60,443 bases of DNA from Octopus bimaculoides (GCF_001194135.2 NC_068986.1:22205367-22265809), one strand, 5' to 3'. Shown: positions 9,701 through 15,700, counted from the stretch's first letter. Made by a program: numbers and translations. Notes: generated by a model not told the origin, from the letters alone.

Positions 9701-12700
9701 ATTATATTTGTGATTAGACATACTGACATCTTAATGTGAAAGCCTAACAAACGCCTGTTCAATAAAAAGAAGTCTGAGTAGGGAGGTGGAAGGAATACAT
9801 ACTATGTGGTTTAGAATTCCCAATAACTTACCTTGAAGAGGAACATAAGGTGATGATAATGACATGCTATCAAATGATCGAAAACGGCAAATGGTCTTTT
9901 TCTTGGATTCTAGTTGCTGGATGTAACATTTTTCTGGCCACTGTGCACAATTAGGTAGGTCAAGTTCTTGAAATTATGAACCATAAATATAAATGAAAAA
10001 TAATAAAAGAAAAAAAAATCACCATATTTATTTACGAACAATGAAATCTTGGACAGATATCTCTTGTAGTTAATACACATTGACATTTTTTGAGTATTAC
10101 ACTGTATCGCAAAGGGAGTGTTTAGTCAGATTTATTATAATTGCTGTATAAAATACACTGCAAATGTTTGTGTAACTTAAATGACACAAAAAGCAAATTT
10201 GAAAATGAACTTTGAACTTTACCACAGTAGGTCATAAAAGTGCATCTAACTTTAAAGCCAACAGTGTGGAAATAATACAATTATATTTTCCATGAAAAAA
10301 TAAAAAGCAATATATTTTTGGAAACCCTAAAGTGTGTTGCTTTTCTATTAAGGACAACCTTTCTAACCCTGCCAACTATCACTCTGCTGCAGCCAAATCC
10401 AATGAGGGATGTTGGTTGTATTTTTTGATGTTGAAGATGAAAGTCAATCTTTGTGATGCAGACTTTGAAATATTGAGGACGATGGGTATGCACCCAAGAA
10501 AGATCTGCAGTGATGGTGAAGCATAGCATCTGTAGTGCTTACATTGAGGGTTCTAGTTGTGTACTGTTCATGTCTAAGGGCCAAACTGTTTTCTTGATAA
10601 ATGTAATGAGTGTGCCTTTAAGTTGTTGAAGGAGACAACACTGGCATAGCATGACTCATTGGAAGATGTTTCTGGGGTCTCTGTTGATGGAGCCAGTGTA
10701 GATTTAGCATAGTGTGTCTAGATTGTGGGTGGATGACAATTTGATGCCTGAAGATTAGAGAAGAATGAAATGTATAACCTGCATAAAAGTGGATGTTGTT
10801 CGTGACACATTAGAATTGATGGAGCATGGACAAGAGAGCTCCATCGGCACACACCAGGTAATCTGATAAAATTACCAATCTAAGAAACAATAGATGCAAC
10901 CTTTTTTGCTAGGAAATTCACAATGGTGGGATGAGGTATATATGCTTGATGCAGAAAATGATATTGTCAAAAAGTTGTTGGTGGCTGGAGGAATTCAAAA
11001 ATGGTAGAGATGGCAAATGTATTTAGAGATATATTTTGAAAGGGACTCTGATGCAAGTAATTGGAAATCCTTGTTAGATCAAGAATGTAAACTCTTCCTA
11101 AAAAATAGCATCATGTCCTTGAGTAAATTAGCCAATATTACTAATTCACAGCTTTTGGCTAGAACTTTTAAATTGTCCTTCAAGTTGCAAAAGAGGCTTA
11201 CCACTCAACTGACATCTGGATGGTAAAGTATCAAATGGTTGAAAGCAATCTTTACGTTTGAGTTTAGATTCCAAGTTTTCCAGAAACTTCTGCTGTACAT
11301 TGGCAAGGAGTTGGAAGAGCTCTCTTGGTTGTGTTGAAGGAACTGTCACAGAATCTGTAAGATCACCTAAATAAAAAGCATTTTATTAGTTGTAATAATA
11401 ATAATAATAATAATAATAATAATAATAATAATAATTTCTACTGGAAGCATAAGGCCTCAAATTTGTGGGGAGGGGACTAGTCGTTTACATTGACCCCAGT
11501 GTTTCACTGGTACTTAATTTATCGACCCTGAAAGGATGAAAGGCAAAGTCAACCTCGGCATAATAATAATAATAATGATGATGATGATGATGATGATGAT
11601 GATGATGATGATGATGATGATGATGATGATGAAGATGATGATGATGATGATGATGATGATGATGATGATGATGATGATGGTGATGATGGTGGTGATGGTG
11701 ATGATGATGATGATGATGATGATGATGATGATGATGATGATGATGATGATGATAATGGTTTCAAATTTTGACACAAGACTAGCAAGTTTGGAGGATGGGG
11801 TAAATTGATTATATTGACTCTAGTACTCAACTGGTACTTATTTTATTGACCCTGAAAGGATGACAGGTAAAGTCGTCAATAGTGGAATTTGAACTCAGAA
11901 CATAAAAACAGATGAAATGCTGTTAAGCATTTTGTCCAGTGTGTTTATATATGTATGTTTATATATGTATATGTGTGTTACTGTCTCTGCGCCTTGACAT
12001 CAAGTGATAGTTATAAAGGAACAGTATTCTTTATTTCCAATTTCTTGTGAAAATATGCCTGGTCACGGGGAATATTAGTGTACTTAGAAACAGGTGAGGG
12101 TTGGCAACAGGAAGGGGGATCAAGTCATAGAAAATCTTCCTCAACAAATTCTGTCTAACCTAGACAAGCATGGAAATGTGGACATTAAAACAATGATAGT
12201 GTCTTGGTCAAGTGTAATTTTGTTTTCAATGTTACTGTTTTCCATTAAGGCAGCCAACTGGCAGAATCATTACCACACAGGGCAAAATGCTCAGTGGCAT
12301 TGCATCTGTCTTTACATTCTGAGTCCAAATTCCACTGAGGTTGACTTTGATTTCAACCTTTGAAGTCAATAAAATAAGTATCACAGGAGTTAATGTACAC
12401 CTGCTCCTACAGTCAGTAGTGGAGGTGCAATGTCCCTGTGGTTAGGGCAGCGGACTCGCGGTCATAGGATCGCGGTTTCAATTCCCAGATCGAGCGTTGT
12501 GAGTGTTTATTGAGCGAAAACACCTAAAGCTCCACGAGGCTCCGGCAGGGGATGGTGGCGAACCCTGCTGTACTCTTCCACCACAACTTTCTCTTACTTC
12601 CTGTTTCTGTTGTGCCTGTAATTCAAAAGGGTCAGCCTTGTCACACTGTGTCATGCTGAATATCCCTGAGAACTACATTAAGGGTACACATATCTGTGGA

Positions 12701-15700
12701 GTGCTCAGCCACTTGCACGTTAATTTCACGAGCAGGCTGTTCCGTTGATCGGATCAACTGGAACCCATGACGTCGTAAGTGACGGAGTGCCAACAGTGCC
12801 AACAACAAGATCCTACAGTCACATCTATTTTTTGGAGTCAGCAAGTCTTGTGCCACCTCCACTCAGGCACACCTTATCCCTCTGATCCTCCCTTATTAAC
12901 TATATTGTATCCCTATATTGTTACTCTTTCTAATGATTCATTTGCTGAACTTTATAACAACTGTGTAATATACTTACTATGTATGGTTATTGTCAGTATA
13001 TTATCCTCCAAAATTGCTGACTTTATGTCAAAATTTGAAACCAATAATATTGTTTTATACTAATATTTTTTTCATGCCAGCATGAATGGGATAATACAAT
13101 TATTGGAACAAACTTTATTTTTCAACAGCTGGATGCCCTTCATACTCTTAACCACTGAAACTATGAAGCAGGAATAAAACCTGTCTTTTTTTGTTCACTC
13201 AGGTAAACTAGAGCAAACAGAGTTAATGGTCTTGCTTAAGAGTTATAAAAGTGTAGTAAACTGTGGATATAAAATCTTGTGGTTAATAGTCCAGCACTTT
13301 AACTAGAGTCATCGTAACTGAAATGACAAAAGATATAAAAAGCAATTTGTCAAAGAAATAGGATAGAATCACAATACCTTTCAGATGATTTTTTACAGCC
13401 ATGGCTTGAATTTTAGTTAAGTAAGTATTGACTTTAGAGAGTATTTTCCCATTAAATACAGGTAGAGCTGGAAAACTTGCATCAGAACAGTTAATGAGAG
13501 GTGGGCAGTAGCTCTGATGTAAAAGATCAAATATTTCACCATCAAGTTCTTCAGCTGAACGCATCATATAAGCATCAATACAATAATGGCCTGGTGTGTT
13601 AACCTCCATACTAGAGTCAGAACTGTTTGACTTATGCGAATGTTTTCGAGGAACCAACACGAAAAGCATGAGTTCACCATCTTTGCTGTTACTGGCATAT
13701 ATAATATCTGGAACAATAGCAAATAAATATTGTCATAATATACAAACAATAACCATACATAATAAGTATTATTACACAGTTGTTATAAAGTTCAGCAAAT
13801 GAATCATTAGGAAGAGTAACAATATAGGGATACAATATAGCTAATATGGCAGGATCAGAGGGATAAGGAGTGCCTGAGTGGCAGTGGCACAAGATCTGCT
13901 GACTCTAAAAAACAGATGTGACTGTAGGAGCAGGTGTGGTGGTGTGGCAAGAAGCCTTCTTCCTAACCACATGGGTTCAGGTTCAGCCCCACTGTGTGGA
14001 ACCTTGAGCAAGAGTCTTCTATTATAGCTTAGGGTTGACCAAAGCCTTGTGAGCGGTTTTGGTAGAGGGAAAATGAAAGAAGCCCATTGTATATGTGTGT
14101 GTGTCTTTGTGCTTGTGCTTATCCCCCACCATTGCTTTACAACCAATGCTGGTGTGTTTACATCCCTGTAACTTAGCAGTTCAACAAAAGAGACTGATAG
14201 AATAAGTATCAGATTTTAAACAAATAAATAAATACTGGGGGTGATTCTTCTGACTAAAAAATTCTTNNNNNNNNNNTAAGTATCAGATTTTAAACAAATA
14301 AATAAATACTGGGGGTGATTCTTCTGACTAAAAAATTCTTCAAGGTGGTGCCCCAGCATGGCCACAGTCTAATGACTGAAACAAGTAAGAGACAAAGAAG
14401 ATTACAGACAGAAATAGCAGAATAAGGAAACAGCATATCTGTGGGCCAAAGGGTTGGAATGCATCAGCAGCAACTTCATACTAGTCTTTTTTAGGGATGT
14501 GGTCAAGAATATCTGTATGTCCAAAATTTACAGTACATCTAGTTCCAAACTGATGACCCCAACCCACTCTTGTAAAATGTATATAGCCATGTATCTTCTC
14601 TACAGCAAGAAAACTGTTCTGGCCCCTTCCTTCATATTCTAAATATTTCATCTTTCATCACTTACCATAAAAACTGCCTCCCTCTCTACTGTCAAAGGGG
14701 GATCTTAGTCTTGCAAATCACATGGTGACCTCACTAGTGTTGCTGCTGCTACAAAAAAGCATCCAGTACACTCTGTAAAATGGTTGGTGTTCATAAGGGC
14801 ACCCAACCATAGAACCCATGCCAAAGTAGACATTGTGGAACAGTGCAGTCCTCTAACTTGTTAGATCCTGTCAACCCATACAACCCATGCCAGTGTGCTA
14901 GATGAATGTTAAAAGATGATGGTGGTAATGATGATGAGGATCATGCTCTAAAACAATTTAGGTATATGATACATATATTTCAAGATTATTGGTTTGACAC
15001 CTGAACAGACTTACCCTGGGTAAAGTCAGCTAGGATGTATTCTTTCCAAGCTACTGTGTTCAGCTCTGAAGTTTTATAGGATGCAACCACATGATCAGCA
15101 GAGTACTTAGATACAGCTACTATTATTGCAAGCTGTTAATATAGAAAATATATCAAAAGATTTCTTTGTCCTAAGACTGATATAAAACATTTTCAAGAAA
15201 TACCTCATAAATTTCTTTAGTTAACTATATAAATGTGTTAGTAAAAAAAAAAAAAGAACCAACAAAAAACATATATGTCTGTAGTTGACCACATAAGTTA
15301 AGTACAGTGACTGTAAAAAAAGATTATACATAATAGAGAAATATAAACATTTAGGGATGATATAAATGATTAACAAAAGGTGGATGTGACTGGGATGAAC
15401 TTCTTAATGCAGAAATGGGGTGTTTCAAACATTTTATAGAATGGAAATGATGTGGGCATGAAAAACGTAGTATACTCCATAGATGTTCAGGAAAGTGTGT
15501 GTGTGTGTGTACTCACACACATACTTGATGGTGTCTCATTAATATCTTTTCATCCACCAGTGCTTGTTATTAGGGGAAAACTAAAAGATCAAACCCTGTG
15601 TATTTATAAAATTTGGGGAGTTCACTCCAACACACAAATGTGTGCAAAATTTGTTTATTCATTCAAACTCAGCATTTTAAAAGTATTTATTTCATCAATA

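What the first reader, a model, noticed from the sequence alone, without database searches (positions are those of the whole stretch)
12397..13937. ~200-bp inverted duplication tightly bracketing a 330-nt frame-preserving MTBP exon
Seen: arms 12811-13004 and 13735-13937 are ~90% reverse-complementary and do not match any repeat family elsewhere in the window. One arm ends 28 nt from the 3' splice site, near the likely branch region. The homology continues across the SINE at 12416-12810 (with TSD), so the duplication predates that insertion. Inferred: the stem could drive exon skipping, ADAR editing or a circRNA. A 330-nt circle would have a stop-free frame (junction codon GAT, internal ATGs) and could be translated as a rolling circle.
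Basis: partly seen in the sequence, partly recalled or inferred. Interest (0 to 1): 0.7.

Follow-up and report, generated by a model that had tools for sequence, protein, structure and literature searches.

The report
Inverted intron duplication around octopus MTBP exon
A 203-base piece of one intron of the Octopus bimaculoides MTBP gene was copied backwards into the next intron, so the exon between them sits in a potential RNA hairpin loop; the structure is real, but it is an ordinary kind of feature and nothing here shows that it does anything.

Summary
Arms 12397-12414+12821-13004 and 13735-13937 are 203 nt and 92.6% reverse-complementary. They have no third copy in the window. They bracket a genuine 330-nt phase-1/phase-1 exon (13378-13707, minus strand) of MTBP. 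A SINE with a 10-nt target-site duplication (TSD) interrupts the left arm.

New findings:
- The window is Octopus bimaculoides.
- The right arm is the source. It lies at the orthologous position in O. sinensis and O. vulgaris, where it is single-copy.
- Both arms carry the first 12 nt of the neighbouring SINE C. The left arm is therefore a local templated inverted copy, not a second transposon insertion.
- The left arm replaced about 16 nt inside another SINE, without a TSD.
- Its age is about that of the bimaculoides/vulgaris split. The sister species have a deletion at that site, so ancestral origin followed by loss cannot be excluded.
- Argonauta has the exon but neither arm.

All annotated MTBP isoforms in four species include the exon. 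The right arm evolves at the neutral intron rate. The stop-free circle frame follows for any 3n coding exon. The window holds about 30 inverted pairs of 80 nt or more lying within 6 kb of each other.

Most likely this is a neutral structural mutation whose RNA stem (about 190 bp) would be ADAR-edited and at most weakly promotes back-splicing or skipping. No RNA data could be examined.

The parts
13735..13937 (-). Right arm, the arm in the upstream intron of the transcript. It is the source copy: 191 nt of intron (13735-13925) plus the first 12 nt of SINE C (13926-13937).
   Evidence: It is 92.6% complementary to the left arm. It is orthologous and single-copy in O. sinensis (L002 47459-47653) and O. 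vulgaris (L004 44363-44557). The SINE C consensus 5' end maps to 13926.
12821..13004 (-). Left arm, main part, in the downstream intron of the transcript. This is the derived inverted copy. Its inner end lies 373 nt downstream of the exon's 5' splice site.
   Evidence: There is no counterpart at the orthologous place in O. sinensis, O. vulgaris or A. hians.
12397..12414 (-). Left arm, outer 18 nt, separated from the rest by the later SINE B insertion. Positions 12397-12408 are the reverse complement of the first 12 nt of SINE C.
12415..12810 (+). SINE B, a tRNA-headed SINE inserted into the left arm after the duplication. TSD TCCTACAGTC at 12405-12414 and 12811-12820.
   Evidence: Sequence. 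Family copies are 83-92% identical, at 7587-7969, 25018-25397 and 5027-5405.
13378..13707 (-). MTBP exon, 330 nt, phase 1 at both ends. It encodes (D)IIYASNSKDGE...AVKNHLK within the MTBP_mid region.
   Evidence: It is conserved in A. hians (L001 14831-15163), O. sinensis and O. vulgaris.
13708..13734 (-). 27-nt spacer between the right arm and the exon. It holds the polypyrimidine tract, the AG, and a branch-point-like TTTAT (A at 13724, position -17).
   Evidence: The spacer aligns to A. hians up to 13731 and is 92.6% identical to O. sinensis.
13926..14261 (+). SINE C, with a tRNA-like head, abutting the right arm. The insertion is orthologous in O. sinensis and O. vulgaris.
12245..12396 (+). 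5' portion of the SINE-1 copy that hosts the left arm.
   Evidence: When this piece is joined to 13005-13065 it aligns to intact SINE-1 copies with a gap of about 16 nt at the junction.
13005..13058 (+). 3' end of the same host SINE-1 copy (CCTCCAAAATTGCTG...GAAACC followed by an AAT-rich tail).
   Evidence: Its last ~30 nt are retained in O. sinensis (L002 48762-48798).
15015..15135 (-). Upstream MTBP exon. Its donor is GTAAGT, immediately after 15015.
11203..11366 (-). Downstream MTBP exon. Its acceptor AG lies immediately before 11366.

Best explanation
This is a local, templated, inverted duplication inside the Octopus bimaculoides MTBP gene. It is most likely a selectively neutral structural mutation.

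A 203-nt segment lay just upstream of the exon's 3' splice-site region. It comprised 191 nt of intron plus the first 12 nt of the adjoining SINE C. It was copied in reverse orientation into a SINE-1 element in the next intron, 373 nt downstream of the 5' splice site. The copy replaced about 16 nt of that SINE and left no target-site duplication. That is the footprint of replication template switching or break repair, not of transposition (inferred).

The event happened after the SINE C insertion, at about the time of the bimaculoides/(vulgaris+sinensis) split, and before SINE B landed in the copy.

In the pre-mRNA the two arms can pair into a near-perfect duplex of about 190 bp. The duplex loops out 730 nt carrying the exon and both of its splice sites (predicted).

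The expected consequences are inferred from known biology and are not shown here. ADAR would hyper-edit the arms. At most there would be a low level of back-splicing or exon skipping, in kinetic competition with normal co-transcriptional splicing. Normal splicing remains the default, because every annotated isoform keeps the exon.
For: - Arms and significance: (203 nt, 92.6%, E=1e-82).
- The exon is ancestral, so the interval cannot be the inside of one transposon. It is present in A. hians with no arms and an upstream intron of only ~235 nt, and in a more distant MTBP homologue, P0004.
- The right arm is the source. Window 14260-13066 is colinear with O. sinensis L002 47146-48314 (91.9%) and O. 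vulgaris L004 44044-45218 (92.9%). The arm occurs only once in those 70-kb and 67-kb loci.
- The junction was copied too. The SINE C family 5' end, AGGTGCAGGAGTGGCTGTGTGG, places the element's start at 13926. The outer 12 nt of both arms are therefore SINE C sequence, and homology stops there.
- Insertion site. SINE-1 halves 12300-12396 and 13005-13065 rejoin against intact copies with a gap of about 16 nt and no TSD.
- Timing. The arms differ at 6.9% of sites, against 6.5% for bimaculoides versus sinensis in the same arm and in SINE C. Site patterns are 13 (Rb=Lb), 11 (L-specific) and 4 (Rb-specific), where Rb = bimaculoides right arm and Lb = bimaculoides left arm. The SINE B TSD lies inside the left arm.
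- Neutrality. The right arm is 93.5% identical to sinensis, SINE C 93.5%, the downstream intron 94.4% and the exon 95.8%.
- RNA pairing. Duplex energy is -305 kcal/mol, and 186 inter-arm pairs appear in the MFE fold of 12790-13960.
- All annotated isoforms include the exon.
- Context. circRNAs in octopus are few (296 high-confidence) and lowly expressed, and editing is concentrated in intronic and UTR hairpins (PMC9699675). Nearby inverted repeats are the main ADAR substrate across metazoans, with O. bimaculoides among the species profiled (PMC9989829).
Against: - No RNA-seq, long-read or population data could be examined, so editing, back-splicing and skipping are neither shown nor excluded.
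- Genome-wide copy number of the 191-nt unit could not be measured. Only about 160 kb of non-redundant octopod sequence from three lineages (O. bimaculoides, O. sinensis/O. vulgaris, A. hians) was available.
- The pair is the highest-identity inverted pair of comparable length in the window and has the shortest exon-enclosing loop. It sits 27 nt from the 3' splice site, a geometry shown in mammalian minigenes to be sufficient for circularisation (PMC4201285). A real effect on splicing is therefore plausible.
- The Rb branch is shorter than the Lb branch (4 versus 11 changes). This could hint at constraint or gene conversion, although it is not significant.
Confidence: 0.7

Rival explanations
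1. The stem is functional. It drives production of a 330-nt single-exon MTBP circRNA, or in-frame skipping of the 110-codon exon. ADAR editing may tune this by melting the stem, and the circle may be translated.
For: - Reverse-complementary arms lie in both flanking introns, 27 nt and 373 nt from canonical splice sites.
- Inverted repeats of 30-40 nt next to splice sites suffice for circularisation in human cells (PMC4201285).
- The circle frame has no stop and 5 ATG per turn.
- The skipped product stays in frame.
Against: - No RNA evidence is available.
- All annotated isoforms keep the exon.
- The right arm evolves at the neutral rate.
- The left arm has accumulated 11 private changes and a SINE insertion.
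- circRNAs are rare and lowly expressed in octopus, which has been attributed to ADAR (PMC9699675).
- Very stable hairpins can inhibit circularisation.
- The upstream arm may be removed with its intron before the downstream arm is transcribed.
- The open circular frame is automatic for a 3n coding exon.
Confidence: 0.15
2. The arms are two independent insertions of one dispersed transposable-element family in opposite orientations, like inverted Alu pairs.
For: - The region is packed with SINEs.
- Genome-wide copy number of the unit could not be measured.
Against: - There is no third copy in the 60-kb window, in 70 kb of O. sinensis, in 67 kb of O. vulgaris or in 33 kb of A. hians.
- Both arms include the same 12 nt of the neighbouring SINE C and share the GCT indel state relative to O. 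sinensis.
- The left arm has no TSD and replaced about 16 nt of its host SINE.
- The unit has no terminal inverted repeats and no A-rich or simple-repeat tail.
Confidence: 0.03
3. The duplication is older than the bimaculoides/vulgaris split and was lost in the vulgaris+sinensis lineage. This is a variant of the best explanation that changes only the timing.
For: - O. sinensis and O. vulgaris keep only the last ~30 nt of the host SINE-1. A deletion therefore removed exactly the place where the left arm would sit.
- Arm divergence (6.9%) is not smaller than orthologue divergence (6.5%).
Against: Thirteen sites have Rb=Lb differing from Rs (Rs = the O. sinensis right-arm orthologue), against 4 with Lb=Rs differing from Rb. 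This asymmetry is expected if the left arm branched from the bimaculoides right arm after the split. Four of the 13 lie in a poorly aligned stretch.
Confidence: 0.3
4. The inverted copy is an assembly artefact of the short-read O. bimaculoides assembly.
For: - The window has several N gaps. The nearest is about 3 kb away, beginning near 16.85 kb.
- The chromosome-scale version (L003) shows the same structure but was not established here to be an independent assembly of the sequence.
Against: - The arms differ at 15 positions, whereas an artefactual copy would be near-identical.
- One arm carries a SINE with a clean TSD.
- Both junctions of the left arm lie cleanly within one SINE-1 copy.
- The right arm is confirmed in two independent assemblies of sister species.
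Confidence: 0.02
5. The hairpin is a source of small RNAs, an hpRNA/endo-siRNA-type locus processed by Dicer from the intron.
For: The predicted near-perfect duplex of about 190 bp resembles Drosophila hpRNA precursors (own knowledge).
Against: - The loop is 730 nt and contains a constitutive exon.
- There is no Rfam match.
- No small-RNA data were available.
- The arms have no other homology in the window or in the related loci that could serve as a target.
Confidence: 0.03

Closest known systems
Inverted Alu or other reverse-complementary matches flanking circRNA exons (Jeck 2013; Zhang 2014; Liang and Wilusz 2014, PMC4201285; Ivanov 2015)
   Same: There is complementary sequence in both introns next to canonical splice sites. 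The arms are far longer than the 30-40 nt shown to be sufficient. A single exon of typical circRNA size is enclosed.
   Different: The arms are not members of a dispersed repeat family but a one-off local duplication. No back-splice evidence exists. The host organism has few, lowly expressed circRNAs.
Mouse Sry, a single exon flanked by a large inverted duplication that yields a circular RNA (Capel 1993; Dubin 1995; as summarised in PMC4201285)
   Same: A locus-specific inverted duplication, not a transposon pair, brackets one exon.
   Different: The Sry arms are longer than 15 kb, and at least 400 nt were reported as necessary. Here the arms are 203 nt and 7% diverged. The circular product is demonstrated for Sry and not here.
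ADAR hyper-edited intronic inverted repeats (Athanasiadis 2004, PMC526178; Zhang 2023, PMC9989829)
   Same: A long intramolecular dsRNA is formed by nearby inverted copies within one pre-mRNA, in an animal with very high ADAR activity.
   Different: Typical substrates are transposon pairs. Editing at this locus was not examined.
Templated inverted insertions and duplications from replication template switching or break repair (FoSTeS/MMBIR; Lee 2007, Hastings 2009; own knowledge)
   Same: A short inverted copy of nearby sequence (730 bp away) was inserted with arbitrary breakpoints, a small deletion at the target, 0-2 nt of junction microhomology and no TSD.
   Different: The mechanism is inferred from the footprint only. 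The event is ancient and cannot be reconstructed directly.
Intron-intron base pairing that loops out an exon and promotes skipping (Solnick 1985; own knowledge)
   Same: The predicted stem closes a loop that contains the exon and both of its splice sites. The stem base is 27 nt from the 3' splice site.
   Different: No skipped isoform is annotated in any of the four species.

Membership tests
circRNA-generating exon with flanking reverse-complementary introns | Reverse-complementary sequence in the upstream and downstream introns | tested here: met
   203 nt at 92.6%; duplex energy -305 kcal/mol.
circRNA-generating exon with flanking reverse-complementary introns | Canonical AG and GT sites on the enclosed exon | tested here: met
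   ttccAG|AT at 13709-13708 and AAAG|GTATTG at 13377-13376.
circRNA-generating exon with flanking reverse-complementary introns | Back-splice junction reads, or an RNase R-resistant product | not testable with these tools
   No RNA-seq access. The published O. vulgaris circRNA set (296) comes from a species that lacks the left arm, and its held supplements do not mention MTBP.
Transposon-derived inverted pair (Alu-like) | Each arm is an independent insertion of a dispersed family, with its own termini and TSD | tested here: not met
   There is no third copy in about 160 kb of non-redundant sequence. The arms share 12 nt of the neighbouring SINE C. The left arm has no TSD and deleted about 16 nt of its host. 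Genome-wide copy number was not measurable.
Single DNA transposon with long terminal inverted repeats (foldback or MITE-like) spanning 12397-13937 | The internal sequence belongs to the element, and the whole unit is absent from empty orthologous sites | tested here: not met
   The internal exon and its immediate intron flanks are orthologous in A. hians, O. sinensis and O. vulgaris, which have no left arm. No TSD flanks 12397 or 13937.
ADAR dsRNA substrate | A long, nearly perfect intramolecular duplex in a transcribed region | tested here: met
   186 inter-arm base pairs in the MFE fold of the pre-mRNA strand. The region lies within the MTBP transcription unit.
ADAR dsRNA substrate | Clustered A-to-G RNA-DNA differences in the arms | not testable with these tools
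   No RNA reads were available.
MTBP (MDM2-binding protein) gene | Encoded protein carries the MTBP_N, MTBP_mid and MTBP_C domains, and the exon maps within it | tested here: met
   Window ORF 2845-3018 hits MTBP_C (3.5e-5, 24.1 bits; below Pfam's 28.4-bit gathering cut-off). The A. hians orthologue P0001 has all three domains and aligns to 19 exon segments on the minus strand from 47903 to 706. The exon peptide is identical to O. bimaculoides MTBP.

The most novel reading that the evidence does not exclude
The left arm is a lineage-specific innovation that turned a constitutive MTBP exon into a regulated one. Where ADAR activity is low, the ~190-bp stem persists and yields an abundant 330-nt circRNA with an endless open frame, or an in-frame protein lacking 110 residues. 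In neural tissue, editing melts the stem and restores the linear isoform. That would be a natural, datable example of a single templated duplication creating an ADAR-gated splicing switch.
Probability: 0.04. Interest if true: 0.7.

Novelty: new member of a known kind. Interest (0 to 1): 0.25.

Why it matters
If the stem affects splicing, this locus would be a clean natural experiment. The sister species O. vulgaris and O. sinensis carry the same exon, the same upstream arm and the same neighbouring SINE, but not the downstream arm. A simple cross-species comparison of back-splice, skip and editing reads would therefore isolate the effect of one complementary partner.

It also documents a small templated inverted duplication whose source, breakpoints and relative age can all be read from the sequence.

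As it stands it is an ordinary intronic inverted repeat in a repeat-rich genome, with no evidence of function.

Tried and rejected
- A word-indexed protein search with the 109-aa exon peptide found nothing. This was a limitation of the index, not absence. The exhaustive HMMER search found the A. hians orthologue, and a second indexed search found the Octopus cluster.
- Pfam and PDB searches on the exon alone were uninformative.
- The exact-sequence look-up of P0008 failed. P0009, P0010 and P0012 worked.
- I first read 13003-13058 as a SINE 5' part lying head-on to the SINE at 12245-12396. Alignment to intact copies showed the two pieces are colinear halves of one SINE-1 split by the left arm.
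- I first placed the start of SINE C at 13932/13938. More family copies moved it to 13926.
- I tested whether homology resumes beyond the SINEs that flank the arms, as it does across SINE B. It does not.
- I checked the L-specific substitutions for an A-to-G excess that might indicate copying from edited RNA. There is none: 0 A>G and 3 T>C among 11 changes.
- Rfam gave no family in 11000-15500. ORFs within the arms have no Pfam match.
- I did not scan the metagenome or prokaryotic genome collections for the arm, because they would not contain octopus DNA. I left the last indexed protein search unused, because the chance of retrieving a skipped or circular transcript ORF was very small.

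
Full report
**1. The observation**

The inverted repeat is in the sequence as described. The repeat finder reports 12811-12970/13770-13929 (160 nt, 93%) and the adjoining 12970-13004/13735-13769 (35 nt, 91%). After excising 12415-12810, blastn aligns the left arm (12397-12414 + 12821-13004) to 13937-13735 over 203 nt. Identity is 92.6% (14 mismatches, one 1-nt indel) and E=1.5e-82. A sensitive search (word size 7, E<0.01) finds no further copy of either arm in the 60,443-base window.

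The interrupting element is a tRNA-headed SINE, here called SINE B. It has three near-full-length copies elsewhere in the window at 83-92% identity. It is flanked by the direct repeat TCCTACAGTC at 12405-12414 and 12811-12820.

**2. The exon and the gene**

On the minus strand, 13378-13707 is bounded by ...ttgttccAG| and |GTattgtg. It is 330 nt long, and one frame is open throughout. The upstream exon ends at 15015 (|GTAAGT) and the downstream exon begins at 11366 (tttatttAG|). Both junctions of the focal exon are phase 1, so inclusion (…TQ-D-IIY…, …HLK-G-DLT…) and skipping (…TQ-G-DLT…) are both in frame.

An exhaustive HMMER search with the exon peptide found an 837-aa protein (P0001) that is 61% identical over the whole exon. 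P0001 is named mdm2-binding protein-like of Argonauta hians. It carries Pfam MTBP_N, MTBP_mid and MTBP_C, and the exon maps inside MTBP_mid. It aligns to 19 exon segments on the minus strand from 47903 down to 706.

The 90% cluster of the Octopus orthologue contains O. bimaculoides, O. sinensis and O. vulgaris MTBP entries. The window's exon peptide is identical to the O. bimaculoides proteins, so the window is O. bimaculoides. Every annotated isoform in the four species includes this exon, and isoforms differ only at the N-terminus. A more distant MTBP homologue (P0004) also aligns across the exon. The exon is therefore ancestral and, as annotated, constitutive.

**3. Orthologous loci**

Four loci were fetched:
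- A. hians, L001
- O. sinensis, L002
- O. bimaculoides chromosome-scale assembly, L003
- O. vulgaris, L004

In A. hians the exon lies at 14831-15163, and the upstream intron is only about 235 nt. Similarity to the window extends 24 nt upstream and 42 nt downstream of the exon. Neither arm is present.

In O. sinensis, window 14260-13066 is colinear with L002 47146-48314 at 91.9%. This block covers SINE C, the right arm, the 27-nt spacer, the exon and the first 312 nt of the downstream intron. O. vulgaris gives the same picture at 92.9%.

In both species the arm sequence occurs once in the 67-70-kb locus, at the position of the right arm (L002 47459-47653; L004 44363-44557). The right arm is thus an old resident of the upstream intron, and the left arm is the derived copy.

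L003 has both arms at the same 909-nt spacing as the window.

**4. Why the left arm is a local copy and not a second transposon insertion**

Aligning the 5' ends of SINE C family members from the window and L002 gives the consensus start AGGTGCAGGAGTGGCTGTGTGG. At the focal copy the corresponding sequence, AGGAGCAGGTGTGGTGGTGTGG, starts at 13926. The outermost 12 nt of the right arm (13926-13937) are therefore SINE C sequence.

The left arm begins with their exact reverse complement (12397-12408, ACACCTGCTCCT). Homology ends there. The left arm also shares with the bimaculoides right arm a 3-nt indel state (GCT) that differs from O. sinensis. A unit that ends 12 nt inside a neighbouring, orthologously placed SINE cannot be a transposon with its own termini. 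It is a copy of this particular place.

At its destination the left arm sits inside one SINE-1 copy. When 12300-12396 and 13005-13065 are joined, they align to intact SINE-1 copies in the window with a gap of about 16 nt exactly at the junction. There is no target-site duplication, and junction microhomology is at most 1-2 nt.

This footprint has five parts: a short inverted copy of sequence 730 bp away, arbitrary breakpoints, a small target deletion, no TSD and little or no microhomology. It is what template switching during replication or break repair produces. That mechanism is inferred from general knowledge, not shown here.

**5. Order and age of events**

The relative order is as follows:
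- SINE C and the host SINE-1 inserted before the bimaculoides/(vulgaris+sinensis) split. Both are present, at least in part, at the orthologous sites.
- The duplication came after SINE C.
- SINE B came after the duplication.

The arms differ at 6.9% of aligned sites. The bimaculoides and sinensis right arms differ at 6.5%, the same as SINE C (6.5%) and close to the downstream intron (5.6%). The exon differs at 4.2%.

In the three-way alignment, write Rb for the bimaculoides right arm, Lb for the bimaculoides left arm and Rs for the sinensis right arm. Thirteen sites have Rb=Lb differing from Rs, 11 are private to Lb and 4 are private to Rb. This mildly favours a duplication on the bimaculoides lineage soon after the split, but it is not decisive.

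O. sinensis and O. vulgaris retain only the last ~30 nt of the host SINE-1, directly followed by the (ATT)n tract and the next 3' splice site. They also carry a different repeat inserted nearby. They therefore have a deletion exactly where the left arm would be. An ancestral duplication later lost in that lineage cannot be excluded; I put it at about 0.3.

The private substitutions of the left arm show no A-to-G excess. Nothing therefore suggests copying from an edited RNA.

**6. What the structure could do**

On the pre-mRNA strand the arms are predicted to form a nearly continuous duplex. Duplex energy is -305 kcal/mol for the 194-nt contiguous part. In the minimum-free-energy fold of 12790-13960, 186 of the 407 pairs are inter-arm pairs. 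The loop is 730 nt and contains the exon, its 3' splice-site region (27 nt from the stem) and its 5' splice site (373 nt from the stem).

Branch-point-like motifs lie at -17 (TTTAT, 13724, in the conserved spacer) and at -56 (CTTAT, 13763, inside the arm).

Known biology makes three consequences plausible:
- ADAR hyper-editing of the arms. Nearby inverted repeats are the main substrate across metazoans, and O. bimaculoides is among the species profiled (PMC9989829).
- Promotion of back-splicing. Inverted repeats of 30-40 nt next to splice sites are sufficient in human cells, although stronger hairpins sometimes inhibit it (PMC4201285).
- Exon skipping by looping out.

None of these could be tested here.

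Several points argue that any effect is small:
- No annotated isoform skips the exon.
- The right arm evolves at the neutral intron rate.
- The left arm has taken a SINE insertion and 11 private changes.
- In O. vulgaris only 296 high-confidence circRNAs were found, at low levels overall. The authors attribute this to ADAR antagonising back-splicing (PMC9699675).
- The upstream arm is transcribed about 1.1 kb before its partner. Ordinary co-transcriptional splicing therefore competes with pairing (inference).

The stop-free circular frame with junction codon GAT and five ATG per turn is correct. It is automatic for any coding exon whose length is a multiple of three.

**7. Base rate**

The MTBP introns are dense with SINEs. 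A self-comparison lists 30 inverted pairs of 80 nt or more that lie within 6 kb of each other, several of which enclose exons. The strongest is a 380-nt, 86% SINE B pair (5027-5405/7591-7966) around the exons at 5507-5881 and 6570-6665. O. sinensis and A. hians have their own, weaker, SINE-derived inverted pairs around the same part of the gene.

The focal pair ranks second by score. Among pairs of comparable length it has the highest identity, and it has the shortest exon-enclosing loop. It is not transposon-derived. It is unusual in degree, not in kind.

**8. Verdict**

The finding is a real and well-resolved structural feature: a roughly 200-bp templated inverted duplication bracketing a constitutive MTBP exon in O. 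bimaculoides. The functional reading is untested, and on contextual evidence it is unlikely to be more than low-level editing and back-splicing.

The feature belongs to the known class of intronic reverse-complementary pairs. Its closest specific analogue is the inverted duplication around mouse Sry. Its main value is as a natural with-and-without comparison against O. vulgaris and O. sinensis. Interest is low to moderate.

Noticed in passing
window 688-47903, minus strand: The window holds essentially the whole O. bimaculoides MTBP gene, as about 19 exon segments. The A. hians orthologue spans 28.9 kb and the O. sinensis and O. vulgaris orthologues 65-68 kb, so the introns differ greatly in repeat load between species.
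   Followed up: partly
window 5027-5405 and 7591-7966: An inverted pair of SINE B copies (380 nt, 86% complementary, 2.2 kb apart) encloses the MTBP exons at 5507-5881 and 6570-6665. It is a longer exon-bracketing stem than the one in the finding.
   Followed up: no
window 14203-14266 and 14277-14340: A perfect 64-nt direct duplication with a 10-nt spacer lies at the 3' side of SINE C. The identity is 100%, so the event is recent or an assembly stutter.
   Followed up: no
window 11560-11760: A long (ATG)n/(ATA)n microsatellite of about 200 nt lies in the intron downstream of the focal exon, next to another SINE-1 copy that is inverted relative to the one hosting the left arm (pair 11832-11943/12274-12383, 78%).
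   Followed up: no
L002 48315-48761 (O. sinensis) and the equivalent stretch in L004: The sister species carry a different high-copy repeat inserted in the downstream intron. They also have a deletion that removed most of the host SINE-1. This repeat has many copies in the bimaculoides window (for example 34080-34362 and 23372-23663).
   Followed up: partly
window 44227-44562, minus strand: A remnant ORF with a Sleeping Beauty/Tc1-type transposase HTH domain lies inside an MTBP intron (Pfam HTH_SB, E=7e-7; 29.3 bits, below Pfam's 43-bit gathering cut-off).
   Followed up: partly
window 57298-57597, plus strand: An ORF ending ...DCNPLDYYV resembles the C-terminal catalytic region of a mariner/Tc1 transposase from memory, but it had no Pfam hit at E<0.01.
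   Followed up: partly
window 59861-60103 and 60261-60443, minus strand: Two stretches translate to the same 61-aa peptide (PPNNLDLSLTLAAVDNSS...), and a short N run lies within the first (59861-60103). This may be an assembly duplication at the window edge.
   Followed up: no
window about 16850-17760, 18730-19030, 48950-49200 and 57740-58240: There are several runs of N (assembly gaps). None lies within 2.9 kb of the finding.
   Followed up: no
tool behaviour: The word-indexed protein search missed the Octopus MTBP cluster when queried with the 109-aa exon peptide, although the cluster representative shares dozens of 5-mers with it. Negative results from that tool with short queries against long proteins are unreliable.
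   Followed up: partly
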